A stretch of DNA of 63,664 nucleotides, filler included, from Octopus bimaculoides (lineage: Eukaryota), in the NCBI RefSeq assembly GCF_001194135.2. It is 6 parts of 6 records of this genome, joined end to end, with 100 filler letters (N's around TTAATTAATTAA, not from the genome) between each part and the next. Parts side by side here need not be neighbours in the genome. Positions count along the whole stretch, not along the records: positions 38,219 to 51,536 come from NC_068985.1; 5 more parts are not named here. One strand, given 5' to 3'. The notes under the pieces are model-generated. The model saw only the letters and a program-made list of their open reading frames with translations. It was not told the DNA's origin and ran no database searches. The translations under genes were made by a program, and so were the position numbers. Of the stretch, positions 18,839-51,784 are shown piece after piece. Each line of letters begins with the position of its first letter. Position 1 is the stretch's first letter.

Positions 18839-18944
<106 letters not shown>

Positions 18945-22535: not shown

Positions 22536-22608
<73 letters not shown>

Positions 22609-23499: not shown

Positions 23500-23835
23500 C
23501 TGGTTTTGCAGTTCGTTTGTGGGCTAAATCTACATACGATACAGTTCCTATCAGTGCAGGGGGGGTCTACTGAAAGGGTATGTTCTACTGATAAGGGATT
23601 TAATAGGGTTGCCTGGCCTTTCAACAACCTTAATTCTTAGCTTAAGTTTGTCTAGGGCCCTTCTAAAGCGGTACGCCAGTTCGCCTCTAGCGGTGGTGTC
23701 GACGAACATGACGCTTTGGTACTTGTGGCTATCATACCATGAGCTTGCCTTCCCTATTTTCTTCTTAGTCCTTTCTATGGTGTTCCATGATTTGCTCCTA
23801 TAGAGTGGGCAAATCCCATACTTATCGTTGCGTTT
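23500..23835 (-). mobile_element. Penelope-like element fragment (post-RT region and Cys-rich linker), nearly intact frame
   Basis: GICPLYRSKSW...KKK...SWY...SVMFVDTTARGELA...LRIKVVERPGNPIKSLI...PP/CTDRNCIVC...NCK, with one frameshift in a G7 run. Missed by the ORF track. Confidence 0.72.
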
Positions 23836-25460: not shown

Positions 25461-25536
25461 TTATTTTCTACTCTAAACACAAGGCCCGAAATTTGGGGGG
25501 AGGGGGAATCGGTTAGATCGACCCCGGTACGCAACG

Positions 25537-25598
<62 letters not shown>

Positions 25599-26327
25599 TA
25601 CATCGAAAAATACTTTCGGAATGAAAACCCAGATTCGAAATCTCCCCAAAATACTTGGAGCCTGGAGGGTATATCAGTTGAAATGTTGTGTTAACAACAA
25701 ACAAGATGAGGACAATTATCCGCCAAATGTAAATATTGTAAATAATCTAAATAATTCCTCATCTCTTAAATATAGAATTGGTACTTAATTCATCGACCCC
25801 GAAAGGATGCAAAACAAAGTCGACCTCGGCAGAATTTGAACTCAGAACGTAAAGACATACGAAATACTGCTAAGCATTTCCCCCGGCATGCTTACGTTTC
25901 TTTTCCACTCTCGGCACAAGGCCCGAAATTTTGGGGGAGGGGACCAGTCGATTAGATCAACGCCTGTACGCAACTGGTACTTAATTTATCGACCCCGAAA
26001 GGATGAAAGGCAAAGTCGACCTCGACGGAATTTGAACTCAGAACGTAAAGACAGACGAACTACCGCTAAGCATTTCACCCGGTGTGCTAACGTTTCTTAT
26101 TTCTTTATTGTCCACAAGGAGCTAAACATAGAGGGGACAAACAAAGACAGACAAAGGGATTAAGTCGATTACATCGACCCCAGTGCGTAACTGGTACTTA
26201 ATTTATCGACCCTGAAAGGATGAAAGGCAAAGTCGACCTCGGCGGAATTTGAACTCAGAACGTAACCCCAGACGAAATACGCTAAGCATTTCGCCCAGCG
26301 TGCTAACGTTTCGGCCAGCTCGCCGCC
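25461..26327 (-). mobile_element. Head-to-tail trimer of SINE family B, leftmost unit interrupted by a 243-bp insert
   Basis: Three copies of the gtcgacc...gaatttgaactcagaacg core; junctions at 25900/25901 and 26096/26097; insert at 25536-25778. Confidence 0.9.
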
Positions 26328-26811
26328 TTGGTCAAATACAGTAATTGAGAGAAAGGCCTATTATCATTATTCTTCTGAATTGTATTTTTTTTTCTGTCCA
26401 TTAGTTTGATTACAATCGTTATTATTGAGCTGTATATGTAACTATTTCGTTTTTTACTCATGAGCTCAGCTGGAGGGTAAAGTTAGACACAGGGTCCCAG
26501 GTCCGAGTCGGTAACTATGTCACACTGGGTGACCCGTTCAGGCGACTCTCTTGTAATCTTTCTTCTCGCCCTAATAACCTAGAAACTGAGCCTAGCTGAA
26601 GCTTTATGAAGATTAGAATGTGTACAACATACATGTGTATGTCATTGTGTACATGTACGTACATGAATGCACATATACATACGTGTGTATGTTTACATCG
26701 ACGCCAGTATTTGACTGGTATTTATTTTATCTATCTCGAAGGAAGAATTCTCACAAGTAAAGAAATTATATCCACCCGGTGTGCAAACGATTCTACCAGC
26801 TCACCGCCTGA

Positions 26812-27008
26812 GATTTTGAAATATTACTTTCAAATTTTGGCACAAGGCCAGCAATTTGGGGGTTAAATCGATTACATTTACCCCAGTGCTCAACTGGTAC
26901 TTATTTGATCGACTCCGAAAGGATCAAAGGCAAAGACGACTTCGGCTGAATTTGAACTCAGAATGACGGATGAAATTTGCTAAGTATTTTCTACCAGTTC
27001 GCCACCTT
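26812..27008 (-). mobile_element. SINE family B
   Basis: ggcacaaggcc...atcgattacatttaccccagtgc...gaatttgaactcagaatg...ccagttcgccacc. Confidence 0.8.
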
Positions 27009-28579
27009 AGCCTTTTCAAATATTAAAATTTAAGTTCTTCTCATACACGACGTGCTGTGCATAAAATATGTAACTTAAATGATGACGAACCGTCTAGAAA
27101 ATCATAAATATGAAGATTAAGCTATCCACTATGTCGACAGCTTAATTCACTACTGATTTTATAAGAGCTGAATTTTCTATACCATAGAATACGGAATAAA
27201 ACTGTAATTTCTTTTTCAATCTTTACAGAAGCTATTTAACGGTCCACTAGGAGTGTTCATCCTTATTTCTCTGCATCTAAAACCATAGGAGAAGTGAATT
27301 TGTAAGTTCATTTCTCCAAAGAAAGACTTCAAGAACTTATAGATTTTATTTTTGTTGATTCACGCCGGTTTATGCCAAAACTATAAAATATTCAATTACT
27401 ACCGGACCGTCGAAAACACATTCATGCAAATTAGGCAATAAATTATGGTGCTAATCTAATTTATGAGTGCTTAATTCAACGGAAGAATATATTATGCTAT
27501 TATTGAGGTACGAAGCTTAAGAGGCATTTTCTCAAACGAGCCTCCAACAAACTTTGAAACAGTCCATCAAGAAACTTCCATTTCTTTCTGCACATGAAAA
27601 GCATATGAAGAATATGTTTACATTCTCATTTTCCCTCACAACTCGGCGTTTTTAAAAAAATGATTTTGACTCCTTCTGATTGAAGCATAGAAACATACAC
27701 ATGTGTGTATATGTGTGTATGCATGTATAANNNNNNNNNNNNNNNNNNNNNNNNNNNNNNNNNNNNNNNNNNNNNNNNNNNNNNNNNNNNNNNNNNNNNN
27801 NNNNNNNNNNNNNNNNNNNNNNNNNNNNNNNNNNNNNNNNNNNNNNNNNTTTGTATATATATATATATATATATGTCTCTTAAAAGATAGAGCTCAAAAT
27901 CGATGCATTGAAGATACTTTATTGCAGCAACAATTATAATAGCAGAAACAACCACAATAAACCAAACCTATGCACATTTCAATAGGTTATCCAGGATAAA
28001 TAAACCACATCGTAAGATGTCTCATAAAATATTATAACATATTACAACATATTACAAATTACAAATTATAAATTATAAATTGCTGGATACTCCATCTCTT
28101 CAGGGTCGCATTATTGCCATCACCAATACTACTATTATTAGCAAAACACACACATCATCAAAGAGGGTGAAAGAATAATCGACGGTACGCAACCTACCAT
28201 CGTTATTTTCTTTCAGAATGTAAACAAACAAATCAAATCAAATCCAGTGACGTGCACCGCCCGGTTTACAGCGTAAAAATCCCTTGCCAAACATTTTTCC
28301 CCATATACATCAAGATTTCCTAATGGATCTTTCTATAACCATAATATATTAACTATACCCACCCGTACACACGCGCACACACACTATATATATATATACA
28401 CCCCAACACACAAATGTAGGTGTATATATATACATATATATATGTATATATACGTACGCATTTATCGATCTATAGAAATGATTGTACACGTATGTATATG
28501 TATATGTATATATATATGTGAGTGTGTGTCTGTTTGTGTGTGTGAGTGCGTGTTTGTGTGCTTGTGCGTGTGTGTTTGT

Positions 28580-28627
<48 letters not shown>

Positions 28628-31047
28628 GTATTTTTTACTAGCATCCTTGTGTGAATTCATTACATTCTAGATGTTTGCAATCTTTCTTTCTTTTATGCCC
28701 TTGGCAAGTTAATTTATAAACCTCAGAAAAGGCATATGAAGTTTGAAATACATTTATTAGCATCGTATGGTTGTGTATTAGCTAAGTGATATTTTCAAAA
28801 AATAGCCGAAAGAGGAGTCTCAATTTACGTNNNNNNNNNNNNNNNNNNNNNNNNNNNNNNNNNNNNNNNNNNNNNNNNNNNNNNNNNNNNNNNNNNNNNN
28901 NNNNNNNNNNNNNNNNNNNNNNNNNNNNNNNNNNNNNNNNNNNNNNNNNNNNNNNNNNNNNNNNNNNNNNNNNNNNNNNNNNNNNNNNNNNNNNNNNNNN
29001 NNNNNNNNNNNNNNNNNNNNNNNNNNNNNNNNNNNNNNNNNNNNNNNNNNNNNNNNNNNNNNNNNNNNNNNNNNNNNNNNNNNNNNNNNNNNNNNNNNNN
29101 NNNNNNNNNNNNNNNNNNNNNNNNNNNNNNNNNNNNNNNNNNNNNNNNNNNNNNNNNNNNNNNNNNNNNNNNNNNNNNNNNNNNNNNNNNNNNNNNNNNN
29201 NNNNNNNNNNNNNNNNNNNNNNNNNNATATATATCTTTTGCGTGCATACATATTGAATGATATAAGAAAATGTGCAGGGTGGCGGTGGATTAGTGTATGT
29301 GTGTAAGTTTGTGTGTTTTTAAGTGTGTGTGTGTGTGTGTGTGTGTGAAAATTCATATTCTTAAATTCAAGCCGAAAAACGAAAAACGATGTAAGTGTAA
29401 ATAGAGAGAAAAAAATCTCCCTTTCCAGTGATTAATGCAGAACGTATATTACTGGCTAAATAATATATCAATGTTAGTTTTATCAACAGTAGGGAGCTGG
29501 CAGAATTTTTACGACCTCGTATTGAATGCGCAGCGGCCTTTCTTACGGCTTTTGTGTTCTGATTTCAATCTCCTCTCGGGTCGATTGTTTCGGGTTGACT
29601 GTCATCCCTTTCGAGAATCAGTAAAATAGATATCCGTCAAGAACTCAGGGAATCGGTGAATTTTCAAATGGAATCGTACCCTAAAATTGCTGGTCTTGTG
29701 CAAAAATTGCTGGTCACTTGACTGCGGCCATGCTAAGCACTGCTTTGAAGGGTTTTCGTCAGGTGTGAGAGATGACTATATTTATTCCACCAGTTGATAT
29801 CCTTAGGATAACGGCTGTTTCACAGGTTTCATCAAAAGTGAATAGTAAATTATTTGACATGTCGGCACTATTATGCATGTTAACACATCAACCCCTGTAC
29901 TTATTTCTTTAAGGTTTGGTACCAAAGTTTTCGGTACCTCTTGAACAGAGGCATTCCGTTACTACTACGTAAACAAATGTTTACCTGTTGACAATCATTT
30001 AGAGTCAAACTCAGAAATGCAACTGTTTGTGTACTTCCTCATTTTTTCCAGCACCAAATTCACTTAGAAAGCATTAGCACACCTACTGCTATAGTAGAAG
30101 ACACCTCTCTAAACACCATGCAATGGAGCTAACCTCTAGTCATGTGGTGGGGTATATTGTTATAATTCTGTTTAATTGTTTGCGAGTCTCTACGTTAAAT
30201 GATAACACCCGATGAATTCCAAGGATTTTCAATTTATTTATGGATAATTCGTGTATATTATTTGTTCTCATTCAGATAATCGATTATGAATTAAAGTAAC
30301 TAGTTAGAAAATCTCACTAAGTGATGAATGTAGTAACTATAATAAATAATGTTTATCGCCACATCAGTATGGTTGCTGGACGTTACTACCCTTAAAGCCA
30401 GGTAGAGCCTCTGTCAGCTGGTTATCGGTGCAATCTGCACCCGATCTATATTGCAAACGTAGGAGCGAACTCCTTTCATGTTCTAGCAGGCGACAGGATC
30501 ATCAGAACGAAAGGTTTCGGGATATTTGAGCCCAACCTTCAGCGGTGGACACCAGGTCGCTACAAATTCTTCGAAAAGGATTAGAGTGTGTTATTTTAAA
30601 GATTGCAGTAAATCAAAGAATGCAATATAACAACTGCTGCAATGATGTTAGGTAATGCTGTTGACGGTTCCTGAAAAAACAATGCGTCACTATCTAATAG
30701 ACTCTTTATACATTATAAGGTGTTGTATTGTCGAATGTTTGAGAAACCCGCTTTACGGCAAAGAGGTTTTTTGCTGCCCACCAAGTGCGTGTGTTACTGA
30801 AGGACAATACGTGTTACTGAAAGAAAATATGTGCGTGTGTGTATTTGTGTGCACTCGTGTGTGTGTGTGGGGGGGGGGGTTACTGTCGTGGACCAAAGAA
30901 TTATAATTGAAGTTTGGTAGTTTCGAAGAATGTTCAACTATCTTCATACTAATTAATAGAGTCGGCATTGCACTTGACTGAACATCTGCCTATTTATAAC
31001 AAAACCTACAGCAACTCATTTACTTTTAATATAGGGTCTTACATAAG

Positions 31048-34757: not shown

Positions 34758-35035
34758 ACTAAAGTCCTTCCACTGATAAAAAAAAGTTCAACTAGAAAAG
34801 ATAACACGCCGCATAATAATATTCAGAATTACTCTGTACTTTTCAAGAAAAAGTGACTACAGGTTACAGATAAAATGTATATGACTACAGAATAGCTTCG
34901 TCAGCGTTGACGTGGTAATAAACAAAATCAACAATTAGTTATTGAAAAGCTGGGATGAGTCTCATAAGTATATTACCCAATGAAATACGAATGATGCACA
35001 CGAATAATTATTATGTGAATTTGCACGTAATATAT

Positions 35036-35356
35036 GAAGGCGCATGGCTCAGTAGTTAGAGCGTCGGGCTCACAATCGTGAGGTAATGAGTTCGATTCCC
35101 GGACCGGGCTATCAGTTGACACTTTAGTTCACGTTGCTCCAGTTCACTCAGCTGTAGAAATAAGCTGCGACGTCATTTGTGCCAAGCTGTATCGGCCTTT
35201 AACTTTCCTTTGTATCACATCAGTGACGTGGAGAGGGGAGGCTGGTATGCATGGGCCACTGCTGGTCTTCCATAAACAATTTTACCAGGATTTGTGCCTC
35301 ACAGGGTAACTTCCTAGCGACAATCCCATGGTCATTCATGATCGAAGGGAGTCTTT
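35036..35356 (+). mobile_element. tRNA-derived SINE family C
   Basis: ggcgcatggctcagtagttagagcg (A box)...gagttcgattccc (B box)...tail ending gtcattcatgatcgaaggg. Confidence 0.85.
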
Positions 35357-38118: not shown

Positions 38119-38493
38119 NNNNNNNNNNNNNNNNNNNNNNNNNNNNNNNNNNNNNNNNNNNNTTAATTAATTAANNNNNNNNNNNNNNNNNNNNNNNNNN
38201 NNNNNNNNNNNNNNNNNNATATGTATATATAGGAGTGTGTATATGTGTATGTATTTATATACATAACTTAGCCCTATGAACTTTCTAAACATTCTGACCA
38301 AGCCTAGAGGCACATCCAAGTACCTTAATTTTATCTACCAAATACTACTGTTCACAGAAGGGATGGAAGTAACATGTGGGGTACTCTGACCTCTTGACTG
38401 AAACAGCTGTAAGAAACTGTTCTAATTTCTATATTCTAATAATTACTGGTATTTTTATATATGCAAAGCATAACCTATTATACATGTATGTAT

Positions 38494-41383
38494 CATCGTC
38501 ATCGTTTAAAGTCCGCTTTCCATGCTAGCATGGGTTGGACGATTTGACTGAGGACTGGCGAACCAGATGGCTGCACCAGGCTGCAGTCTGATCTTGCAGA
38601 GTTTCTACAGCTGGATGCCCTTCCTAATCTCAACCACTCCGAGAGTGTAGTGGGTACTTTTACGTGCCACCGGCACGAGGGCCATTCTGGTGTTATTGGC
38701 AACAGCCATGCTCAAGTGGTGTTTTTTACGTGCCACCTGCACAGAAGCCAGTTCAGCAGCACTGGCAACGACCTCTCTCGAATGTTTTTTTCACATGCCA
38801 CCGGCACAAGTGCCAGCAAGGCGATGCTGGTAACGATCACGCTCGAATGGTGCTTTTTACGTGCCACCAGAACAGAAGTCAGTCAGCTGCTCTGGCAACG
38901 ATCGCACTCGGATGGTGCTCTTAGCGCTCCACTAGCATGGGTGCCAGTCATCGAATTTGATTTCGATTTCGATTTCACTTGCCACAACAGGTCTTCGCAA
39001 GCAGAGTTTAGTGTCCAATGAAGAAAAGGTACGCATAAGTGGGCTGGCTACATCCCTGGCATAGGCCACAGGTTATGTTCTCACTTGGCTTGCAGGGTCT
39101 TCTCATGCACAGCATATTTCCAAAGGTCTCAGTCACTTGTCATTGCCTCAGTGAGGCCTAATGTTCGAAGGTCGTGCTTCACCACCTCATCCCAGGTCTT
39201 CCTGGGTCTATCTCTTTCACAGGTTCCCTCAACCGCTAGGGTGTGGTATATTTTCACACAGCTATCCTCATCCATTCTTGCCACATGTCCATACCAGCAC
39301 AATCGTCTCTCTTGCACACCACAACTGATGCTTCTTAGGTCCAACTTTTCTCTCAAGGTACTTACACTCTGTCGAGTATGCACACTGACATTACACATCC
39401 ATCGGAGCATACTGGCTTCATTCCTTGCGAGCTTACGCATGTCCTCAGCAGCCACGGCCCATGTTTCACTGCCATGTAGCATGGCTGTTCATATACATGT
39501 GTCATACAGTCTACCTTTTACTCTGAGCGAGAGACCCTTTGTCACCAGCAGAGGTAAGAGCTTTCTAAACTTTGCCCAGGCTATTCTTATTCTAGCAGCT
39601 ACACTTTCAGAACACCGTCCCCAGCTACTAACTTGGTCACCGAGGTAATGGAAACTATCAACTACTTCTAGTTTTTCTTCCTGGAATGTGGTGGAAGTTG
39701 TTTTCTGCACATTTACAGCGTTTATTGGTCCTGAGCATCTGCCACATACAAAAACTATCTTCCCAGTTTGTCTTTCTTTGATATTGCTGCACCTCTTATG
39801 TGTCCATACCTTACACTGGATACATCTTATAGAGTTTCTACCTACACCTTTTCTACAGATTGAGCAGGGCCATCTACCTGAAGGGATTTGTGGTTTGTCT
39901 GCCTTCCTACCTATTTGGACTTTGGTTTTAGCTAGGTTGACTCTAAGGCCCTTCAATTCTAATCCTTGCTTCCCCACTTGAAACTTCTCCTCTTGTTCTG
40001 ATAGTGACGCAAGGTCATCAGCATAGAGGAGCTCCCAGGGGCATCCTGTCTTGAATTCCTCTGTTATTGCCTGGAGGACTATGATAAATAGGAGGGGGCT
40101 GAGGACTGAACCTTGGTGGACCCCTACCTCTATCCGGAATTCTTCACTGTATTCGTTGCCAACCCTCACCTTACTGACAGCATCCCTGTACATGGTTTGC
40201 AGAGCTCTCACTAACCATTCATCTATCCTTAGTTTCCTCATTGACCACCAGATAAGGAATTGGGGGATCCTGTCAAAGGCTTTCACTATGTCAACGAAAG
40301 CCAAGTACAAAGGTTTATCTTTGGCTAGGTATTTCTCCTGCAGCTATCTTACCAGAAATATAGCATCAGTGGTGCTTTTCTGTGTCACAAACCCAAACTG
40401 CATCTCATCTAATCTAACTCTTTCCCTAATTAGTTGGGCTATGACCCTCTCTGTAACCTTCATTACCTGATCCAACAACCTCTGTAATTATTTGTATCTA
40501 AAGCGTCACCTTTACCATTGTAGTAGTTGACTATGATGCTGCTACACCAGTCATTGGGTAGGACTCCTTCGTGTATCACTTGGTTAACTATATGGGTGAC
40601 TAGGCTATAGCCCACACCACCGGATAGTTTAAGCATCTCTGCAGTGATTCCTGATGGGCCAGGGGCTTTCCTGTCTTCATACTCTTAATTGCATTATCTA
40701 CCAAAGTACTGTCATTTCGGATAGCTGGTCCCTCTTTTGAGTCGACAATCGACAGACTCTCTTTCTCCCATTCATTCTCTTTATTGAGCAACCTTTGATA
40801 GTGGCATCTACAAACCTCTCTCTTTGCAGCCTCGTTTAGTGCAAGTGAGTCATCATCCATGCAAACACATTTCTCTCCTATGACATCACAATTCTCTCTC
40901 ACACACTGTCTTGCAACACGAACTACCTCAAGTCTTTGGTCCTCATGGCACAGAACATTGGCAATTTTTTTCTTATCTGCTTCCCCTCTGGATAAATAAA
41001 CCTGTCAGCTAGCTTCCCTTCTGGCAGTCTGATACAATTCCCTGCTACTACCGTTCTTCCAGTCCTTCCAAGCCTGTTTCTTTTGTCTAATAGCCCTGTC
41101 AACAACATTGTTCCACCACCATGTTATTTTGGATTGAGAGGGGACTTTGCACCATCCACAGATCTGGTCAGTGGCCCTCAGCAGGTTGTCCCGTAGAAAA
41201 CTCCAGTTGTCTTCTACACCGTGTGAAGCTATATCCCCTTCTATTTCATCAAAGGCTTCAAGTAATATGTTTCTAAATCTCTGTCCATTCGCAGGTTCTT
41301 TAGCCTCCAGACCCTTCTCCTCCAAGCTTGTCGTCTTCTGGGCATCCATTTAGCCCTGATACTGAAGTCGCTAACTACCATCC
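38494..41383 (-). mobile_element. 5'-truncated RTE-clade LINE (end of EN, RT, 3' UTR)
   Basis: RT motifs YLAFVDIVKAFDR, GVHQGSVLSPLLF, ELLYADDL, YLGD, MLHGSETW; (GAT)-type tail; possible 7-bp TSD TATGTAT (38487-38493 / 41384-41390); stops and frameshifts. Confidence 0.95.
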
Positions 41384-41697
41384 TATGTATATTATTATAA
41401 TTGTTTAAAATAAATAAATAGACATAATATAATGTCTAACAGTTGATGAATACCACCTCTTGATCCCCTCCATTTTCTTCTTGCCCCATAAATTAAGGGT
41501 GAACCAACTTTTTACCCTTGCCCATTTATTACATTCAGTAGTGTAATTGCCAAGCAATAAACAACACTTTTATATTAATAATTGGGTATTCTACCAGCAA
41601 TATAGTGATAGATATTATCCTTTAGTTTGTTGTATTCACAACCTCTAACTCTCTTGGAATTATATATATATATTGGTTTTGTTTTCCTTTCTTTCAG

Positions 41698-41979
41698 TTT
41701 CTCTTGCAACACCAGATGGTAGCATGAAATTTGTCAAGATAAAGCAAGAAGTAACTTTTAAATGTCCTATTGCAAATGAAAGCATTACAGTCTGGATACT
41801 CAGATTATATCAAATTAGTAGTCCTGGTTGGTTACCTGTTAAAACTCAAGACTTTGAAGCAAATGTACTTCCTGGGAAAGTCAACATCTTGAACATCACA
41901 CTCCTTTCACATGGAGAGATAACAACTATTTGTAAGAGCACTAACAAGGTGATGAAATTTAAAGCAATAGCACTATATA
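41698..41979 (+). CDS. Ig-like domain exon 1 of an uncharacterised IgSF protein (phase 1-1, 94 codons)
   Basis: Acceptor ttttcctttctttcAG|, donor |GTAAGT, open frame VSLATPDG...VTFKCPIANESITVW...NILNIT...TTICKS with B-strand Cys, C-strand Trp, F-strand Cys and N-glycosylation sequons. Confidence 0.8.
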
Positions 41980-42644
41980 GTAAGTACCAAATAGTAATCA
42001 TTTTTATATATTTTTCTGTCCATATTAAGATATAATGATCAAAGACAAAATATATTTCTGTAAAAACTAACTTTGAGATTCAGTCAATTCACAAAATTTG
42101 ATAGTTGTGACTAAGAATTACTACAAATAATATTTTAATATTCATAACTTACTTCCTGATATTATTCCAGTAATATTGAAATGGCGATATTATGGCTAAG
42201 GTTATATGTTTGATTTGCAGAAGAGAGACTTAGTTACTATTATGTTATCCATAAATTGTTTTTAGTGTGATGAAATTAACAATTGATAATTGTTCTAAAA
42301 ATTTGAGAAGTATAATATTTTAATGCATTAAACCTCATCTTTAGGGTGTACAGAGGTTGGATTTCTGATTATCAGCAAATCATTCCTCAATATGCACACA
42401 TGCATGCACATGTGCATACACACACATGCACATACATGCATACATTATATATATATANNNNNNNNNNNNNNNNNNNNNNNNNNNNNNNNNNNNNNNNNNN
42501 NNNNNNNNNNNNNNNNNNNNNNNNNNNNNNNNNNNNNNNNNNNNNNNNNNNNNNNNNNNNNNNNNNNNNNNNNNNNNNNNNNNNNNNNNNNNNNNNNNNN
42601 NNNNNNNNNNNNNNNNNNNNNNNNNNNNNNNNNNNNNNNNNNNT

Positions 42645-42816
42645 AAACAAGAATACATATTATTTTCAAATAGTAGAAAATCTTTAGCAAAGTAAAAACA
42701 GTATTTATCCATATTTTTCCGTAATTCAAACTTGAATTAAGGAAAAATATGGATAAGTACTGTTTTTACTTTGCTAAAGATTTTCTACTATTTGAAAATA
42801 ATATGTATTCTTGTTT
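42645..42816. repeat. 172-bp near-perfect palindrome (85-bp arms, 2-nt loop, 2 mismatches)
   Basis: 42645-42729 is the reverse complement of 42732-42816. Confidence 0.92.
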
Positions 42817-43356
42817 TTTATATTATTCTTTGGTTCCTTTATTCAACTGCATAGTGGATACTATTCTAAAAATAACTAAAAGCTGACTTTATGACCCTAC
42901 TGGTCAAGAGAAGAATTTGTGGACAAAATTTAAGTTATGTTACTATTCTTCGCTTTTTGGTTTTTTAGATAAACAAGTTAATTGTTGTTGTTTCTAGGGT
43001 AGTCAAGACATTCATTCATTCATACTATTGGATCTAGGTTTTTTCATTTGCAAAATATACGTTTTTTAAAAGTTAGTAAAAAATCTGAAAATCGGCTCTT
43101 ATAATGTAGTCTTCCAGTCTCATTGCTATGAAGGTATCCTGGTGTGGTGAAAAAGATTGGAGAAAAATGTTACAGAGCTTTAAAAACTGGAAAAACTGTG
43201 TATTTTTAGGCAATAGCAAGACAGAAATTTTCTGCATTTAGCGGAACAGTGTCAACTTTAAGGTTGTGCCCTGTAAAATTTATAGTTTAGTGTCTGTAAT
43301 ATGACCTATTCCTTGTAGGTTTCTAAATAAACAGAAATACCTAATAAAATCAACAT

Positions 43357-43903
43357 AGGTGTAAGAGTGGCTGTGTGGTAAGTAGCTAGCTTACCAACCA
43401 CATGGTCCCGGGTTCAGTCCCACTGCGTGGCATCTTGGGCAAGTGTCTTCTACTATAGCCTCAGGCTGACCAAAGCCTTGTGAGTGGATTTGGTAGACGG
43501 AAACTGAAAGAAGCCCGTCGTATATATGTATATATATATGTATGTGTGTGTGTATATGTTTGTATGTGTGTGTTTGTCCCCCCAACATCGCTTGACAACC
43601 GATGCTGGTGTGTTTATGTCCCCGTAACTTAGCAGTTCGGCAAAAGAGATCGATAGAATAAGTACTAGGCTTTTAAAGAATAAGTCCTGGGGTCGATTTG
43701 CTCGACTAAANNNNNNNNNNNNNNNNNNNNNNNNNNNNNNNNNNNNNNNNNNNNNNNNNNNNNNNNNNNNNNNNNNNNNNNNNNNNNNNNNNNNNNNNNN
43801 NNNNNNNNNNNNNNNNNNNNNNNNNNNNNNNNNNNNNNNNNNNNNNNNNNNNNNNNNNNNNNNNNNNNNNNNNNNNNNNNNNNNNGAAACAAGTAAAAGA
43901 GTA
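43357..43903 (+). mobile_element. SINE family A
   Basis: Head, microsatellite and tail, with a gap in the tail. Confidence 0.9.
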
Positions 43904-44101
43904 TGTATCATCTTACTGTTTCTTTTGTTTCTTCATTCTTTCACACACACACACACACACACACATGCACACACATAAGTGTATGAGTGGCTATACAGTT
44001 GAGAAGCATACTTTCCAACCATATGTGCCACAGCACCTTGGAGTAGTGACTTTTACTATAGACCCAGGCTCATCAAAGCCTTGTCAGAATCTAAAAAATG
44101 T

Positions 44102-44137
<36 letters not shown>

Positions 44138-44164
44138 TGTGTGTGTGTGTGTAAGGTCTTGTTT

Positions 44165-44917
44165 ACTGAACCATTGTCCTGATGAAAAAAGATCCCTTTT
44201 GTCAGTTTTCCTGGGTGTTTGGTCCTGATAGATAGCTTTTTGTAACTGCCTCAGCAAGCTGACATAGCACTATTTGTTGATAGTGTAGCTCATTTGAAGA
44301 TGGTCAATAAACAATGTTTTTTGCATCCCAAGAAACTGAAGTCATCACCTTCTCTGCAGTTGAAACAACTTCGGTCTTATTTGGAGCAGTTGGAGGGGAG
44401 TGTTTCCACTGCATGGATTGTCTCCTTTTCTCTGGCTCAAAGTTAGGAAACTAGCTGTCAGATTTTTCCATGATATGATCAGCCTGGTGTGCTTTTGATC
44501 AGATGTCAGAAGCTGAGGCACCTGCTGAGCAGAAGCCTTCGTTATGCTAAGTTCAGTGTGCAAAATATTCTCAACTCTCCCAAAGGATATGCTAATAGTG
44601 TCAGCTATTTAACTTATAATCAGTCACATTTATCCATCACCATGTGGTGAACACAAACTATGTTTTCCACAGAGGTGGCAGTAGCAGTATGTCTGGACAT
44701 TGGGTCATCTTCAATACTCTCCATTCACCACCTAAATTCAGCTATCCACTTTTGCACTGTTGATAATGGAGGAGTGTCATCCCTTAATGTAGGAACCATA
44801 TTGGCATGAGTGCTCTTGGGGGCTAAAGGCTTTTTTCTGAAACTACACAATAACACAAAGATGCTAAATTTTGTCCATTTTCAAGAGAAGTCATCACTTC
44901 TCTAATGACCCCTCTGT
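44165..44917 (-). mobile_element. Decayed mariner transposase fragment (Mos1/Hsmar-like)
   Basis: MDKI..VI...KK..P......TLRDDTPPLSTVQKW...EDDP.S; KASAQQVPQLLTSDQK (SARWVPRLLT..QK); FFHQDN; 3' part lost at a (GT)n. Confidence 0.85.
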
Positions 44918-45707
44918 TGTGGCAAGACACCTGCTTCTGTCTCTCTGTCTTTGTCACACTAATCTTCCATCCTCTGACACAAGTTCCTCTTCTCAAATAC
45001 CCTGCCCCTCTCATAATACAGTGAGCATGGCAGTGAGGGCAAGAAAGGGNNNNNNNNNNNNNNNNNNNNNNNNNNNNNNNNNNNNNNNNNNNNNNNNNNN
45101 NNNNNNNNNNNNNNNNNNNNNNNNNNNNNNNNNNNNNNNNNNNNNNNNNNNNNNNNNNNNNNNNNNNNNNNNNNNNNNNNNNNNNNNNNNNNNNNNNNNN
45201 NNNNNNNNNNNNNNNNNGAGCAGCGATACAGTGAGCATGGTAGTGAGGGTAAGAAAGGGGATTGGAAAACAGGTTGATTATCAATTATGTAACAATTCAA
45301 TATTATTCTACAGGAAAGGAGTATTATATTCTTGCAAGGGATGTTTTTTTTTATTAATATGCTATCAAATCTCTATGTATCAAGTTGTCATTAAAAGCAT
45401 TAACTAGAGATATTGTGTTGTCACTTGTCAAACTTACCTTGCTATCTAACTACAATTCTTGTTCCCAATCACTCTACTTAACCCATTCCTCCATAAAATA
45501 TCTGCCAATGAGATTTGGTTGATTTTAATTTGTATCCTAGAGAATAAAAGACACCTTTTTTTTACATGTAATATTTGTTTCATATTATCAGTTTATTTTT
45601 TATTATTTTATAAATAGACTACAATCAAACTGACTTGTTTTATATTAAAAATGTTCTGTCATTTGGTGAATAATGCTTGATTTATTTTGTAATAATTTGT
45701 CTTTTAG

Positions 45708-46019
45708 ATGACATTGGGAACCTTTACCCAAGTTTTGAAACACCAAATGCGATAAAGGATAAAAAATTCACATTGAAATGTAATACAAATGGTAATAGTG
45801 CTTCAACATTTTGGTATACTGGAAATGGAGCAGTCATTGCTAAATACAGTGGAGTAGTCAACCAAGGTTATTCCAAATATTTTGGTAGCCGTCAAGAAAC
45901 TAGTTGCCAAGAGAAAATCTGTACATTGAGTATAACCAATGTCAGTTTAGATGAAGACAACATGAGCATTATTTGCAGTTCTTCTAGCCATACAAGTATG
46001 TTCAGTATTACAGTATTTG
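45708..46019 (+). CDS. Ig-like domain exon 2 of the same IgSF protein (phase 1-1, 104 codons)
   Basis: Acceptor ttgtcttttAG|, donor G|GTAAGT, open frame FTLKCNT...FWY...SCQEKICTLSITNVSLDED.MSIICSS; canonical Ig Cys/Trp/L/D/Cys pattern plus an extra CxxxxC pair. Confidence 0.87.
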
Positions 46020-46257
46020 GTAAGTAATAATGTTTTGCACAGTCAAGTGTGTGATTTTATTTTATTATTCTTTTATTTATTTCAGTCATTGGACTGTGGC
46101 CATACTAGGGTACTTGAAGGGTTTAGTCAATTAGATGGACCCCGTGCTTATGTTTTGAGTTTAGTACTTAGTGTATTGGTCTCATTTATACCAAACTGTC
46201 AAGTGACTGGAAGGTAAACAAAACTGCATTCATCGTAAAGTGAGAAATACACACTAA

Positions 46258-48744
46258 AAAGCCCCAGGCCCATCAGGAATCACTGCAGAGATGCTCAAAA
46301 TATCTGGCAGTGTCGGCTATAGCCTAGTCACTTGTATTGTTAACCAGGTGATACACGAAGGAGTCCTACCCAACGACTGGTGTAGCAGCACCATAGTCAA
46401 CTGCTACAAAGGTAAAGGTGACGCTTTAGATACAAATAATTACAGAGGTATCAAGTTGTTGGATCAGGTAATGAAAGTCACGAAGAAGGTCATAGCCCAA
46501 CTAATTAGGGAGAGAGTCAGTTTAGATGAGATGCAGTTTGGGTTCATGCCAGGGAAAAGCACCACTGATGCTATATTTCTGGTAAGACAGCTGCAGGAGA
46601 AATACCTAGCCAAAGATAAACCTCNNNNNNNNNNCTCAAAATATCTGGCAGTGTCGGCTATAGCCTAGTCACTTGTATTGTTAACCAGGTGATACACGAA
46701 GGAGTCCTACCCAACGACTGGTGTAGCAGCACCATAGTCAACTGCTACAAAGGTAAAGGTGACGCTTTAGATACAAATAATTACAGAGGTATCAAGTTGT
46801 TGGATCAGGTAATGAAAGTCACGAAGAAGGTCATAGCCCAACTAATTAGGGAGAGAGTCAGTTTAGATGAGATGCAGTTTGGGTTCATGCCAGGGAAAAG
46901 CACCACTGATGCTATATTTCTGGTAAGACAGCTGCAGGAGAAATACCTAGCCAAAGATAAACCTCTGTACCTGGCTTTCATTGACATGGAGAAAGCTTTT
47001 GATAGGGTCCCCCAATCCCTAATCTGGTGATCAATGAGGAAACTAGGGATAGAAGAATGGCTAGTGAGAGCTGTGTGAGCCATGTACAGAGACACTGTCA
47101 GTAAGGTGAGGGTTGGCAACGAGTACAATGAAGAATTCCGGGTAGAGGTAGGGGTCCACCAAAGTTCAGTTCTCAGCCCCCTCCTATTTATTATAGTCTT
47201 CCAGGCAATGACACAGGAATTCAAGACAGGTTGCGCCTGAGAGCTCCTCTATGCTGAGTCACTACCAGAACTAGAGAAGAAGTTTCAGGTGTGGAAGCAA
47301 GGATTAGAATCAAAGGGCCTTAGAGTCAACCTAGCTAAAACCAAAGTCCTAATAAGTAGGAAGGTAGACAAACCAAAAACCCCTTCAGGTAGATGGTCCT
47401 GCTCGATCTGTAGAAAAGGCATTGGTAGAAAGCTACGGACACATAAGAGGTGCAGCAATATCAAAGGACAGTTAACTAGGAAGTTAGTTTTTGTATGTGG
47501 CAGATGCTCAAGAGCAATAAACACTGAAAATGTGCAGAAAACAATTTCTGCCACATTCCAAGGAGAAAAACTAGAAGTAGTTGATAGCTTCCACTATCTA
47601 GGTGACCAAGTCAGTAGTGAGGGAGGATGCACTGAAAGTGTAGCTGCTAGAATAAGAATAGCCTGGGCAAAGTTTAGAAAGCTCTTACCTCTGCTGGTGA
47701 CAAAGGGCTTCTCGCTCAGAGTAAAAGGCAGACTGTATGACGCATGTGTACGAACAGCTATGCTACATGGCAGTGAAACATGGACTGTGACTGCTGAGGA
47801 CATGTGTAAGCTTGCAAGGAATGAAGCCAGTATGCTCCGATGGATGTGTAATGTCAGTGTGCATACTCGACAGAGTGTAAATACCTTGAGAGAAAAGCTG
47901 AACCTAAGAAGCATCAGTTGTGGTGTGCAAGAGAGATGATTGCACTGGTATGGTCATGTGGCAAGAATGGATGAGGATAGCTGTGTGAGAAAGTGCCACA
48001 CGCTAGCAGCTGAGGGAACCTGTGAAAGAGGTAGACCCAGGAAGACCTGGGATGAGGTGGTGAAGCATGACCTTTGAACATGAGGCCGCACCAAGGCAAT
48101 GAATTGTGACCGAGACCTTTGGAAATATGCTGTACGTGAGAAAACCCAGCAAGCCAAGTGAAACTATAATCCGAGGCCTCTGCCAGGAGTGTAGCCAGCC
48201 CACTTATGCATACCTTTCCTTCATTGGATACTAAACTCCGCTTGCGAAGACCTGTTGGGGGCAAGTGAAATCGAAATCGTGATGGCACCTGTACCAGTGG
48301 AGCACTAAGAGCACCGTCCAAGTTTGATCATTGCCAGGGCAGCTGTCTGGCTTCCATGCCGGTGGCACGTAAATAGCACCATTTGAGCGTGATCGTTACC
48401 AGCGTCACCTTACTGGCACTTGTGCCAGTGACACATGAAAAAACATTCGAGCGAAGTCATTGCCAGTGCCGCTGGACTGGCTCCTGTGCAGGTGGCATGT
48501 AAAATACACCATTTTGAATGTGGCCGTTGCCAGTACCACCAGGTTGGCCTTCGTGCCAGTGGCACATAAAAACACCCACTACACTCTCGGAGTGGTTGGC
48601 GTTAGAAAGGGCATCCAGCTGTAGAAACTCTGCCAAATAAGATTGGAGCCTGGTGTAGCCACCTGGTTCACCTGTCCTCAGTCAAATCGTCTAACCCATG
48701 CCATCATGGAAGGCAGACGTTAAACGATGATGATGATGATGATG
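46258..48744 (+). mobile_element. 5'-truncated RTE-clade LINE, same family as 38494-41383, opposite orientation
   Basis: NYRGIKLL, QFGFMPGKSTTDAIF, YLAFIDMEKAFDRV, MLHGSETW; (GAT)n tail. 46294-46624 is duplicated across a 10-N gap. Confidence 0.95.
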
Positions 48745-48944
48745 TATACACCATCGTCGTCAAAGTCATTAAGAAGATATGTTGTGGGGAGGGGAGAAAT
48801 TCATCAGAGATAGAATGTATGCAAGGAAATTCATGAGAATGCAAAAGGAGAGTGGAAAATAGAGGGTAAGGGAATGCAGTGAAATGTGGACATGGGTGAA
48901 GGGAGTGGGTGTTAGGAAGATGAGTTGTTGGGGAAAGATTTATC

Positions 48945-50800
48945 AGACAGGTTGTGAGTAGGTCTCAATTTTACTTAGATGAACAGGTCTTCTCAAGAAT
49001 AGTAAATTACCAATAATCTCTGTGAGGCTCAGTACCTGAGGGTCATTTTTTATCAGTTCATTCCACTTTTTCCTAGGTCTTTCTCTTCCACAGGTTCCAT
49101 CCACATATAGTACTTGGTTCTTCTTTATACTGCTGATCTTACACATATGCATTTATTTATTTATTTATGTGTTTCAGCCAAGTGGCTGCGGTCATGCTGA
49201 GCCATTCCGGAGCAGTCTCTTTTCTTACTACATCTGATACCTTTTATACCAAATTTTTCTCTCAATATATTTCTGCTTTATTTTACATTTACACCAACAT
49301 TACACTAATCCTCTACATTCACAGCCTATGTTTCACTACTGGGTGGTATAACTGTTTGTACAATTTGCCTTTCACTCTGAAGAAGAGGCCATTTATTATC
49401 AACGAAGGGAATAGTTCTCTGATTTTTCCCCAGCCAGTTCTTATTCTAACTACTTCACTTTCAGAGTATCCTTCTCCATTGCTAATTAGGTCACAGGTAA
49501 CAGAAATTTTCTACTACCTCTAAGATCCTCCTGAGTATTTGAAGAAATCTATTTCTTGTGTATTGTTAGTATTTATTGCATTTTCACATCAGCCAAACAC
49601 AAAGACTAATTTCTTTGTTAACTTTCTTGTAATTTCACTGCACCCTACATATGCCCATAGCTTGTATTTGGTACAGAGTATGGAATGTCTATCAACACTT
49701 TTTCTACATATCAAACAGAGCTACTTTCCTGAAGAGATTAGTAATTTGTTTGCTTCCCTGCATACGAAGTTTTTAGGCTTTGCTTAGTTAATTTTAAGGC
49801 CCTATGATTCCAAGCATTGCTTCCACACTTGATATTACTTTTTTAATGCTACTGTAAATCCAGCTATAAGAACAAGGTCATTGGCATAGAGGAGCTTCCA
49901 TGTGCAACCAGTCTTAAACTCCTCTGTTATGGCCTGAAGAACTATAACAAACAAGGAGGGGACTGAGAATTAACCCCTGTTGAATTCCTATCTGAACACT
50001 AAATTCATTGCTATATTCATTGCTGACTTCCATAGCAACTACCCAATTAGAGAGTGAGGGACAGTGTCAAAAGTTCTCTCCATGTCAGTAAATAATTAGT
50101 ACAGCAGATTATGTTTGAGCAAATGCTTCTCCTGCAATTGCCTTACTCAGAAGATAGCATCAGCAGTGTTTGTCTCATCTTGGTCAACTATCTTCCAATT
50201 TAGTTGAGTTGTGACAGTTTTTTGTAACTTTCATGATCCCCTCCACCAATATGATACCTCTAATTACTTCTGTCTAAGCCATTTCATTTACCATTGTAAC
50301 AGTTGGCTATAATGCTACTACACCAGTTGTTGGGTATGATACCTTCCTGGACAACGTGCTTAACTATATGGGTGACTGCAATATATCACACTCACTCAGT
50401 TCAGGGATCTTTGACTTGCAAGTTATATGCTGACCTCACTGGTGCTTATGTTATGTAAATGGCACCATCCAACCCATGACAGCATGAAATATGGACATTA
50501 AATGGTGATGATGAAGATGATTATGGTAGCTTTATCTATCTTATTATTGTCAACTCAGACAGCTGGTCTTTCTGTTGGGTCCACTTTAAGAAGACTCTCC
50601 TTCTCCTGTGCATTCTCTGTAGCAGTCTTTCATAGTGACATTTACATGCCACTTTGTTATCAGAATCATCCATCCATACACACTTCACAAAACTCCAATA
50701 TCCTAGTTCCCTTCATTGTTGGAACCAACTCCATAGCTTCCATGCATATCATGGAAGCCACTCAGATGCTGCCCATTGATGCAACCAGCCATGACGATAA
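48945..50800 (-). mobile_element. Older, fragmented RTE LINE remnants (RT and EN pieces), with a plus-strand RTE tail at ~50400-50522
   Basis: GTCGRERPRKKW, GCTWKLLYA.DL, CHYERLL, LIVMAG..NG..SGFHDMHGSYGVGSNNEG. Confidence 0.8.
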
Positions 50801-51033
50801 GGTTGCTACTGTGGCTTCTGCTTTTGGCAGGCGAGAGTGCAGAATTGACAGAGACATTGAGGGAGGGGCCCAGAGAGGTACATACTGTTGGTTGAAGCCT
50901 TCATCTCTTCCTACAATTTAACATCAGCTTGACATGCTTGCATATGCGAGCAGATTTTCTACACAAGGTGTGTGTGTGTGTGTGTGTGTGCTCGTACATG
51001 TGTCAGTACATATATATATGTATGTATGTATGC

Positions 51034-51122
<89 letters not shown>

Positions 51123-51131
51123 CATACATAA

Positions 51132-51162
<31 letters not shown>

Positions 51163-51282
51163 TATATATAAATAATATAGGGTAAGGTTAATTGATTAAT
51201 CAATCAATTAATTAATTGATTAATAGTTAATAATTTTACCAAGTAGTCAGTATGTGAAAATAACCTTTATAGGTGAATTATA

Positions 51283-51515
51283 CAAAATATTTAATAATTA
51301 TATACATAAATATAATTATAATCAGGGGTCAGCTAATTGCTTCGCCATGTACCAAAATTAGAAATTGCCTACATAAAAAAGTGTGTTATTGTCTCGGAGA
51401 TACTTGTGATAGTTGAAATGACATTAGCTGCTGTTTCGAATTTCAGTATGTAACGAAGCAATTAGCTGACCCCTGATTATAATTATATCTATGTATATAA
51501 TTATAGAATATTTTG
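51283..51515. mobile_element. MITE-like element: 62-bp inverted arms with a 109-bp spacer
   Basis: caaaatatt...ataatcaggggtcagctaattgcttcg (51283-51344) vs reverse complement at 51454-51515, 3 mismatches. Confidence 0.7.
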
Positions 51516-51784
51516 TGTGTATATATATATATATATNNNNNNNNNNNNNNNNNNNNNNNNNNNNNNNNNNNNNNNNNNNNTTAATTAATTAANNNNNNNN
51601 NNNNNNNNNNNNNNNNNNNNNNNNNNNNNNNNNNNNAGAATGTTCTCTATGTGGCTTGTGTGTTTTCTCGTCTACGTTTTGTTTGCAATGTCCTGTACCC
51701 AGATATGCACCTATACATACAGGTGGATGTCGGTATGCACATACCTGTACGTATATATGCATATACTCATTTACTATTTGTTTT

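What the first reader, a model, noticed from the sequence alone, without database searches (positions are those of the whole stretch)
38494..48744. Inverted ~2.5-kb RTE pair brackets both symmetric Ig exons: circRNA with an endless ORF, or an editing/skipping switch
Seen: the minus RTE (38494-41383) ends about 315 bp before Ig exon 1, and the plus RTE (46258-48744) starts about 240 bp after Ig exon 2. One 180-bp stretch differed at 9 positions (~95%). Both exons are phase 1-1 and total 594 nt (198 codons). Back-splicing 46019 to 41698 recreates G+TT (Val), so the circle has no stop in that frame and contains an in-frame ATG (GSMKF). Known: inverted repeats in flanking introns promote back-splicing and are ADAR substrates; stop-less circles of 3n length can be translated by rolling circle; coleoids have high ADAR activity. 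Inference: this locus could yield a circRNA encoding Ig-Ig concatemers, joint in-frame skipping of both domains, or DNA inversion of the cassette. Chance arrangement is plausible given the LINE density.
Basis: partly seen in the sequence, partly recalled or inferred. Interest (0 to 1): 0.7.

Follow-up and report, generated by a model that had tools for sequence, protein, structure and literature searches.

The report
Inverted LINE pair around two octopus Ig exons
Two decayed copies of the same jumping gene sit in opposite directions in the introns on either side of two exons of an octopus immunoglobulin-type receptor gene. The layout is real and could let the RNA fold back on itself, but everything checked points to an accidental arrangement, and nothing shows that it does anything.

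Summary
A minus-strand LINE copy (38494-41383) and a plus-strand copy (46258-48744) bracket two phase 1-1 exons (41698-41979 and 45708-46019; 594 nt). The back-splice codon is G+TT (Val), and that frame has no stop.

- **Arm length:** the plus copy is inflated by an assembly artefact, an exact 331-nt duplicate around the 10-N gap. The real paired arm is about 2.15 kb.
- **Identity:** 86-89% overall, not 95%.
- **Location:** the piece is Octopus bimaculoides chromosome CM046605.1, gene LOC128247864, a member of an Octopus IgSF receptor family. Both LINE copies are intronic in the gene model.
- **Origin of the copies:** they have different 5' truncation points and unrelated flanks, so they are independent insertions.
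- **The "endless ORF":** this is generic, because every circle made of whole phase 1-1 exons here is stop-free.
- **Conservation:** the bracket is absent from one O. bimaculoides paralogue and two O. sinensis relatives.
- **Literature:** published octopus data report low circRNA levels.

The most likely consequence is ordinary intronic dsRNA that ADAR edits. Circularisation, exon skipping and inversion remain untested. Interest is low.

The parts
38494..41383 (-). LINE copy A, 5'-truncated, 2890 nt. Its 3' end with the (GAT)n-type tail is at 38494. It has decayed RT ORFs and a roughly 640-nt 3' UTR with 131-nt tandem units. It lies in the intron upstream of E1, antisense to the gene.
   Evidence: RVT_1 E=2.6e-15 plus PHD E=1.2e-5 on ORF 39489-40310(-); ORFs; direct repeat D7; 3157 RT homologues.
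38494..40669 (-). The part of copy A that is reverse-complementary to copy B: the left arm of the potential RNA stem.
   Evidence: I1-I8. blastn plus 1-2137 against minus_rc 715-2890 at 86.7%. Global alignment gives 1892 matches, 236 mismatches and 80 gap columns. 92.6% pairable with G.U.
41698..41979 (+). Exon E1, 282 nt, phase 1-1. It encodes the first extracellular domain after the signal peptide in the family. It is Ig-like only by its C23...W33...C79 pattern and is fast-evolving (37-53% identity to paralogues).
   Evidence: Splice sites and frame; 100% match to residues 86-179 of XP_052824005.1; family alignment; no Pfam or PDB hit.
45708..46019 (+). Exon E2, 312 nt, phase 1-1, the second Ig domain.
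   Evidence: Ig_3 E=6.8e-4. TCR V-beta E=0.0037. 79-82% amino-acid identity to O. sinensis homologues, with only in-frame indels and dN/dS 0.53-0.79. The equivalent region of paralogue P0004 contributes to hits that pass Pfam's Ig_3 cut-off for the whole protein.
46258..48744 (+). LINE copy B, 5'-truncated, sense to the gene, tail (GAT)n at 48744. Its true length is about 2146 nt after the assembly duplicate is removed. It is the right arm of the potential stem.
   Evidence: RVT_1 E=1.1e-11 on ORF 46689-47030.
46625..46965 (.). Assembly artefact: a 10-N gap plus a 331-nt exact repeat of 46294-46624.
   Evidence: D4; the 331-nt left suffix equals the start of the right flank; flank blast at 100% over 331 nt.
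49359..50391 (-). Older, degraded remnant of the same LINE superfamily, 67-80% identical to copy A. It lies in the same downstream intron, inverted relative to copy B, and is a weak competitor for pairing.
   Evidence: D6, D8 and I13; blastn hits at L003 28554-29218 and 29368-29572.
42458..45217 (.). Stretch of the E1-E2 intron that holds three assembly gaps (42458-42643, 43711-43885, 45050-45217). No exon is affected.
   Evidence: for gap coordinates; the flanks of 45050-45217 overlap by 34 nt at 94%, so that gap may be spurious. E1 is followed directly by E2 in all family proteins.

Best explanation
This is a chance arrangement. Two independent, 5'-truncated retrotransposition events of one young LINE subfamily landed in opposite orientations. 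One is in the intron upstream of E1 and one in the intron downstream of E2 of LOC128247864, a fast-evolving Octopus bimaculoides IgSF receptor gene that sits in a LINE-rich region.

**Shown:** the anatomy, the independence of the insertions, their intronic position in the gene model, and the absence of the bracket in related loci.

**Inferred:** when the gene is transcribed, the two arms can form a long intronic dsRNA of about 2.1 kb. Its most likely fate in a coleoid is promiscuous A-to-I editing by ADAR and removal with the introns, with at most a minor, unselected effect on back-splicing or on joint skipping of E1+E2. The stop-free circular frame is a by-product of the phase 1-1 exon structure shared by Ig exons and is not a feature of this locus.
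For: - **Different 5' truncation points and unrelated flanks.** Copy A reaches 714 nt further 5' than copy B, and only LINE sequence is shared.
- **Age.** Pairwise mismatch is 11%, a Jukes-Cantor distance of about 0.12, or about 0.06 per copy. This fits the LINE/SINE wave at JC 0.065 reported for O. vulgaris. That paper cites an O. vulgaris-O. bimaculoides split 13-33 Myr ago (PMC13282606).
- **High local density, both orientations.** This LINE superfamily covers 27% of the non-N bases of the host locus, 32% of two O. sinensis loci and 16% of a paralogue locus.
- **No conservation.** A paralogue in the same species (L004) and two O. sinensis loci carrying the E2 homologue have no inverted pair of at least 500 nt at 78-80% identity or more within 12 kb. 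The LINE pieces next to the O. sinensis E2 homologue are different insertions with the opposite polarity.
- **Generic ORF.** All three possible circles (E1, E2, E1+E2) are stop-free.
- **Literature.** Octopus circRNAs are reported as low overall, and most editing lies in introns and 3' UTRs (PMC9699675).
Against: - A pair this long and this similar within 6 kb is not common locally. It is the only one in about 236 kb of related octopus sequence surveyed, so 'inevitable given LINE density' overstates the case.
- Its arms are far longer than the complementary stretches that, from published minigene work as I recall it, suffice for circularisation.
- They lie within about 300 nt of strong splice sites.
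- The across-exon pair is better than the best visible within-intron competitor, which is 78% over about 1.7 kb at L003 33105-34781.
- No RNA data were available, so a real effect on splicing cannot be excluded.
Confidence: 0.75

Rival explanations
1. The inverted pair drives back-splicing of E1+E2 into a 594-nt circRNA, whether or not it is translated.
For: Complementary arms of about 2.1 kb are 92.6% pairable. A 401-nt sample gives a duplex dG of -690 kcal/mol against -176 for shuffled partners. The arms lie 314 and 238 nt from consensus splice sites. Both lie in introns of one gene model. The across-exon pair is stronger than the within-intron competitors.
Against: - No RNA evidence is available.
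- Octopus circRNAs are reported at low levels, consistent with repression by ADAR, and long near-perfect dsRNA is the preferred ADAR substrate (PMC9699675).
- A 91%-identical plus-strand LINE tail abuts the 1.8-kb gap just beyond the piece (L003 32538-32700), so further competing partners may be hidden.
- The arrangement is not conserved.
Confidence: 0.15
2. The circle is translated by rolling-circle translation into Ig-Ig concatemers with a biological role.
For: The length is 3n, there is no in-frame stop, and there are four in-frame ATGs.
Against: - The property is generic to any whole-exon circle from phase 1-1 exons.
- The circle lacks the family signal-peptide exon (MEF..LL..QC.C), which lies about 16.8 kb upstream, so the product would be cytosolic and unlikely to fold as an Ig domain (inference).
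- No internal ribosome entry element was identified.
- It requires the circRNA itself, which is unproven.
Confidence: 0.02
3. The intronic stem loops out E1+E2 and promotes their joint in-frame skipping. This would give a receptor without its two N-terminal domains, possibly tuned by ADAR editing of the stem.
For: The signal-peptide exon candidate ends in phase 1, and E3 begins in phase 1, as shown by VF|V-LPK in P0003. Skipping therefore keeps the frame. Domain content varies among family members: P0007 lacks the E3-type domain, and P0001 and P0002 lack E1.
Against: No isoform data are available. The variation among family members is between genes, not between isoforms. The arrangement is unique to this paralogue.
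Confidence: 0.07
4. The inverted repeats mediate DNA inversion of the exon cassette by non-allelic homologous recombination.
For: The repeats are inverted, about 2.1 kb long, and 5.6 kb apart.
Against: Identity is 89% and the longest perfect tracts are 76 and 67 nt, which is poor substrate for homologous recombination (general knowledge). Inversion would put both exons on the wrong strand and break the gene. In the reference, E1 and E2 are in the gene's orientation.
Confidence: 0.01

Closest known systems
Inverted Alu (IRAlu) pairs flanking circularised exons in primates; more generally, circRNA biogenesis driven by complementary intron sequences (Ivanov et al. 2015, cited in PMC9699675; the rest from general knowledge)
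   Same: Reverse-complementary copies of one retroelement family lie in the two introns flanking internal exons, close to the splice sites. Competition between across-exon and within-intron pairing applies in the same way.
   Different: The arms here are LINE fragments about 2.1 kb long, roughly seven times an Alu. The host is a coleoid with very high ADAR activity, where circRNAs are reported to be scarce. No back-splice has been observed.
Intronic inverted-repeat dsRNA as a substrate for ADAR hyper-editing
   Same: A long, imperfect intramolecular duplex formed from oppositely oriented repeats in one pre-mRNA. Published octopus data place most editing in introns and 3' UTRs (PMC9699675).
   Different: Editing at this locus was not examined, and nothing marks it out from other such pairs.
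Circular RNAs with an 'infinite' ORF translated by rolling-circle translation (general knowledge)
   Same: 3n length, no in-frame stop, and an in-frame AUG.
   Different: In this case the open frame is an automatic result of phase 1-1 Ig exons. There is no signal peptide, no initiation element, and no evidence that the circle exists.
RTE-class LINEs of Octopus (RTE-2_OV and the O. bimaculoides RTE, PMC9115989)
   Same: An abundant, recently active non-LTR retrotransposon of Octopus with a single RT-bearing ORF and a 3' UTR of about 600 nt. The copies here are 5'-truncated.
   Different: The clade was not tested here. These copies carry a PHD-like finger inside the RT ORF, whereas RTE-2_OV is described with a C2H2 finger.

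Membership tests
Exon cassette flanked by inverted repeats (circRNA-permissive locus) | Reverse-complementary repeats in the intron upstream and the intron downstream of the exon(s) | tested here: met
   About 2.15 kb at 86-89% identity, 92.6% pairable with G.U.
Exon cassette flanked by inverted repeats (circRNA-permissive locus) | Both repeats are part of the same primary transcript | tested here: met
   By the gene model only. RefSeq exon 1 (L003 10001-10255) and the family-type signal-peptide exon (L003 4042-4096) both lie upstream of copy A, and E3 (L003 36428-36748) lies downstream of copy B. E1 starts in phase 1 and has no leader exon in the 314 nt before it. Transcription itself was not observed.
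Exon cassette flanked by inverted repeats (circRNA-permissive locus) | Across-exon pairing is stronger than within-intron pairing | tested here: inconclusive
   The best visible within-intron partner of copy B is 78% identical over about 1.7 kb (L003 33105-34781). A 91%-identical tail abuts a 1.8-kb gap, so a hidden young copy is possible.
circRNA | Back-splice junction observed in RNA and resistant to RNase R | not testable with these tools
   No RNA reads were accessible. The literature reports only overall low circRNA levels in octopus.
Translated circRNA with an infinite ORF | 3n length, no in-frame stop, in-frame AUG | tested here: met
   594 nt, 0 stops, 4 Met. The same holds for E1-only and E2-only circles, so the feature does not discriminate.
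Translated circRNA with an infinite ORF | Cap-independent initiation and a detected product | not testable with these tools
   None.
ADAR-edited intronic dsRNA | Long intramolecular duplex | tested here: met
   In silico only: 27 perfect runs of 20 nt or more, the longest 76 nt; dG -690 kcal/mol for a 401-nt sample.
ADAR-edited intronic dsRNA | Clustered A-to-G RNA-DNA differences | not testable with these tools
   No RNA data.
RTE clade of non-LTR retrotransposons | RT domain; single ORF with an N-terminal APE; clade placement by RT phylogeny | tested here: inconclusive
   RVT_1 is present. The APE is missing because both copies are 5'-truncated. No source names the clade of the 3157 homologues. 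No phylogeny was run, and the reference RTE sequences were not obtainable.
RTE clade of non-LTR retrotransposons | Short simple-repeat 3' tail rather than poly(A) | tested here: met
   Both copies end in GATGAT-type repeats (38494-38506 reverse-complemented; 48725-48744).
Immunoglobulin superfamily domain exons | Significant match to Ig domain models | tested here: inconclusive
   E2: Ig_3 at 20.5 bits, below the cut-off of 30, and TCR V-beta at E=0.0037. Paralogues P0004, P0006 and P0010 pass the Ig_3, I-set and C2-set_2 cut-offs. E1: no Pfam or PDB hit even with a family profile. The AlphaFold model of E1 is all-beta but of low confidence (pLDDT 66) and Foldseek gave nothing meaningful. The E2 model was unusable (pLDDT 41).
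Immunoglobulin superfamily domain exons | One domain per phase 1-1 exon, with a conserved Cys...Trp...Cys core | tested here: met
   Both exons are phase 1-1. C23, W33 and C79 are invariant in eight E1 homologues. C25, W36 and C90 are invariant in E2.

The most novel reading that the evidence does not exclude
In tissues that express LOC128247864, the LINE stem produces an abundant E1+E2 circRNA. Its stop-free 594-nt frame is translated into repeating Ig-Ig polypeptide, with ADAR editing of the stem setting the balance between the circular and linear forms. This would be a retrotransposon-built, editing-gated switch in a lineage-specific octopus receptor family.
Probability: 0.02. Interest if true: 0.65.

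Novelty: new member of a known kind. Interest (0 to 1): 0.2.

Why it matters
If the pair did drive regulated circularisation or skipping, it would be a concrete locus for testing how very high ADAR activity in coleoids interacts with repeat-driven back-splicing. It would also show a young LINE wave rewiring a lineage-specific receptor gene. As it stands, it is one more instance of a known permissive layout and has no evidence of use. Its practical value is as a test amplicon and as a flag for two annotation or assembly errors: the duplicated 331 nt, and the probably wrong 5' exon of XP_052824005.1.

Tried and rejected
- **First homologue search.** The word-indexed search with E1+E2 returned only two O. 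sinensis models covering E2. It missed the window's own RefSeq protein and all the paralogues. The exhaustive representative search with E1 found them.
- **Structure prediction.** E1 alone gave a low-confidence all-beta model whose Foldseek hits were meaningless. E2 with a three-sequence alignment gave pLDDT 41 and was unusable.
- **E1 family profile against PDB.** Nothing significant.
- **E1 homologue in the O. sinensis loci L001 and L002.** None by blastn or tblastn, so orthology of those loci is uncertain.
- **tRNA scan for the SINE head.** No hit.
- **My guess that 44160-45049 is a mariner remnant.** No Pfam support, so it was dropped.
- **My impression that 46075-46250 is an antisense SINE 3' part forming a second inverted pair with the SINE at 43360-43710.** blastn did not confirm it, so it was dropped.
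- **Naming the LINE clade.** Homologue names gave none, a literature search gave nothing useful, and the supplements hold truncated FASTA only.
- **Inverted segmental duplication as the origin of the pair.** Rejected, because only LINE sequence is shared and the 5' ends differ.
- **Scaffold mis-orientation as the cause of the inversion.** Rejected. Each LINE copy lies in the same contig as an exon on the gene's strand, and the two contigs that carry copy B overlap exactly.

Full report
**1. Where the piece comes from**

The piece (window 38219-51536) is identical to Octopus bimaculoides assembly GCA_001194135.2, chromosome record CM046605.1, locus L003 positions 17414-30731. Window coordinate equals L003 coordinate plus 20805. 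Large assembly gaps bound it on both sides.

**2. The exons**

- E1 is 41698-41979 (282 nt) and E2 is 45708-46019 (312 nt).
- Both have pyrimidine-rich acceptors ending in AG and GTAAGT donors. Both are phase 1-1, and together they are 594 nt.
- Joining 46019 to 41698 makes the codon G+TT (Val). The circular frame has no stop and four Met codons.

**3. Are they real exons of a real gene?**

The word-indexed protein search found only two O. sinensis models covering E2. An exhaustive HMMER search with E1 found more:
- P0003 = XP_052824005.1 (LOC128247864, O. bimaculoides, 400 aa) contains E1 at residues 86-179 at 100% identity, followed by E2 and a third Ig exon.
- Seven related representatives from O. 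bimaculoides, O. sinensis, O. vulgaris and one unnamed Logan assembly.

The longer members (P0006, P0007, P0010) have this layout:
- a signal peptide (MEF..LL..QC.C-V);
- an E1-type domain, an E2-type domain, in P0006 and P0010 an E3-type domain, then more Ig domains;
- a transmembrane segment;
- in P0007 and P0010, a long cytoplasmic tail with repeated tyrosine motifs.

They pass Pfam's Ig_3, I-set and C2-set_2 cut-offs.

- **E2.** On its own it is only a sub-threshold Ig_3 match and a marginal TCR V-beta match.
- **E1.** It has no domain hit even as a family profile, and its structure model was of low confidence. It does keep an invariant C...W...C core.
- **Coding constraint on E2.** E2 differs from its O. 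sinensis homologues by in-frame indels only, with dN/dS 0.53-0.79, and 1.9 between the two O. sinensis copies. So it is coding but fast-evolving.

**4. The repeats**

- Copy A (38494-41383, minus strand) and copy B (46258-48744, plus strand) encode decayed reverse transcriptase (RVT_1) with an embedded PHD-like finger. Both end in GAT-type simple repeats that face outward.
- The 10-N gap at 46625-46634 is not a real gap. The 331 nt before it are repeated exactly after it.
- Collapsed, copy B is 2146 nt and aligns as one block to copy A positions 715-2890. The alignment has 2208 columns, 1892 matches, 236 mismatches and 80 gap columns. Identity is 88.9% without gaps.
The mean window is 86%. The longest perfect runs are 76 and 67 nt.
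- As RNA, half of the transitions become G.U pairs, so 92.6% of aligned positions can pair. A 401-nt sample has a duplex energy of -690 kcal/mol against -176 for shuffled partners.
- The clade name 'RTE' could not be verified.

**5. The other gaps**

Gaps 42458-42643, 43711-43885 and 45050-45217 all lie in the E1-E2 intron. E1 is followed directly by E2 in the RefSeq model and in five paralogous proteins, so no hidden exon is expected.

The flanks of 45050-45217 overlap by 34 nt at 94%, so that gap may also be spurious.

Each LINE copy shares a contig with an exon on the gene's strand. The inverted orientation is therefore not a scaffolding artefact.

**6. Are both repeats inside the transcript?**

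- E1 begins in phase 1 and so needs an upstream exon. The 314 nt between copy A and E1 hold no leader exon.
- The annotated first exon lies at L003 10001-10255.
- A better candidate lies at L003 4042-4096: a family-type signal-peptide exon, MEFNLLYLKYLLIMQCSC, followed by T|GTAAGT in phase 1.
- Both candidates are upstream of copy A, and E3 (L003 36428-36748) is downstream of copy B.

**7. Origin**

The two copies have different 5' truncation points and share nothing beyond LINE sequence. They are independent insertions, not an inverted duplication.

Their divergence is a Jukes-Cantor distance of about 0.12, or about 0.06 per copy. This matches the young LINE/SINE wave at JC 0.065 reported for O. 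vulgaris. That paper cites the O. vulgaris-O. bimaculoides split at 13-33 Myr (PMC13282606).

**8. Chance or not?**

- This LINE superfamily covers 27% of the host locus, 32% of two O. sinensis loci and 16% of a paralogue locus, in both orientations. LINEs make up 12.9% of the O. vulgaris genome overall.
- A pair this long and this similar within 12 kb is nevertheless the only one in about 236 kb surveyed.
- With none in the other roughly 223 kb, the rate could still be as high as about one per 74 kb. That would be thousands to tens of thousands of pairs in a genome of about 2.5 Gb (my estimate), so some must bracket exons.
- The O. bimaculoides paralogue LOC128247863 (L004; E1 at 13009-13350, E2 at 34911-35228) has no such bracket.
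- The O. sinensis E2 homologues are flanked by different LINE fragments of the opposite polarity.
- Nothing indicates retention or recurrence.

**9. The 'endless ORF'**

E1 alone (junction ATT), E2 alone (GAT) and E1+E2 (GTT) all give stop-free circles of 3n length. This is what phase 1-1 coding exons do. Only T+AA, T+AG or T+GA at the junction would break the frame.

The circle would lack the signal-peptide exon. Any product would be cytosolic and unlikely to fold as Ig domains (inference).

**10. Literature**

A multi-tissue O. vulgaris study found circRNAs at overall low levels, which its authors call consistent with ADAR repression. It found no departure from other invertebrates in back-splicing, and it found most A-to-I editing in introns and 3' UTRs (PMC9699675). 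RTE-class LINEs are recently active in Octopus (PMC9115989).

**11. Verdict**

The best explanation is an accidental, lineage-specific pair of LINE insertions. Its most probable molecular consequence is an edited intronic dsRNA. Circularisation, skipping and inversion remain possible in descending order of likelihood, and none is supported by evidence. The kind of arrangement is well known, so this is a new instance of it and interest is low.

Noticed in passing
window 41698-46019; L003, L004; proteins P0003-P0010: The host gene belongs to an apparently Octopus-restricted IgSF receptor family. At least three genes lie on CM046605.1: LOC128247863, LOC128247864 and a 704-aa Ig gene starting about 10 kb downstream. 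The N-terminal domain (E1 type) is very variable (37-53% identity), whereas the second and third domains are much more conserved. The family has a transmembrane segment and long tails with repeated Tyr motifs (e.g. EPRYLPMKHPDMNDVYVSV in P0010, GPEYLEL in P0007). E2 dN/dS is 1.9 between two O. sinensis copies. The layout looks like that of an immune-type or recognition receptor.
   Followed up: partly
L003 4042-4096 and 10001-10255 (outside the window piece): The first exon of RefSeq model XP_052824005.1 encodes 85 residues with no signal peptide and no Pfam hit. A family-type signal-peptide exon (MEFNLLYLKYLLIMQCSC, phase-1 GTAAGT donor) lies 6 kb further upstream. The model's 5' end is probably wrong.
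   Followed up: partly
window 46294-46965: An exact 331-nt duplicate on both sides of a 10-N gap. This is an unmerged contig overlap that persists in the chromosome-level assembly and inflates the LINE copy by 341 nt.
   Followed up: yes
window 45016-45259: The last 34 nt before gap 45050-45217 match nt 9-42 after it at 94%. The gap may be a heterozygous overlap or a short tandem repeat rather than missing sequence.
   Followed up: partly
window 42645-42816: A near-perfect palindrome (85-nt arms, 98% complementary, 2-nt spacer) starts immediately at the edge of gap 42458-42643. It is either a fold-back artefact of assembly or a real hairpin.
   Followed up: no
window 39700-39860 (-) and 47395-47520 (+): The LINE's RT ORF carries a PHD-like zinc finger (CSICRKGVGRNSIRCIQCKVWTHKRCS). 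The RVT_1+PHD combination recurs in most of the 120 listed hits, out of 3157 homologues, including proteins from Hydractinia, Branchiostoma and Elysia. Copy B has a deletion inside the finger.
   Followed up: partly
window 38658-38935 and 48283-48514: The LINE 3' UTR contains about 131-nt tandem units (TTTTACGTGCCACC...), partly variable in number between copies.
   Followed up: no
L004 54833-55033; protein P0005 residues 380-446: The gene model of the paralogue LOC128247863 ends in an exon taken from a sense-oriented LINE copy of the same superfamily (…GYKGKGDALGKNNYKGIKLLDQEMKVTKRVIAQ…). This is either real exonisation or premature termination, or an annotation artefact. Copy B in the window is also sense-oriented directly after E2.
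   Followed up: partly
L003 32538-32700 (just beyond the window piece): A plus-strand LINE tail 91% identical to copy A abuts the 1.8-kb gap that ends the piece. Another young copy, also inverted relative to copy A, may be hidden in that gap.
   Followed up: no
window 43360-43710 and 44033-44087: A SINE-like element on the plus strand, with a tRNA-like head by eye (ARAGORN found none), is cut by gap 43711-43885. A second fragment of it lies 300 nt downstream. Related copies are scattered through the O. sinensis loci.
   Followed up: partly
window 51282-51516: An inverted repeat with 83-nt arms (88% complementary) and a 69-nt loop, embedded in AT-rich simple sequence at the end of the piece. 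It could be a MITE-like hairpin.
   Followed up: no
proteins P0001 and P0002 (O. sinensis LOC115230044, LOC118761523); L001 10001-10096: Both O. sinensis models join the E2 homologue to a far-upstream exon (20-30 kb away) that encodes QHLMDSFSTACNALSLTTSLQKT. By eye this resembles a LINE RT C-terminal motif. No E1 homologue lies in either locus. These models look unreliable.
   Followed up: no
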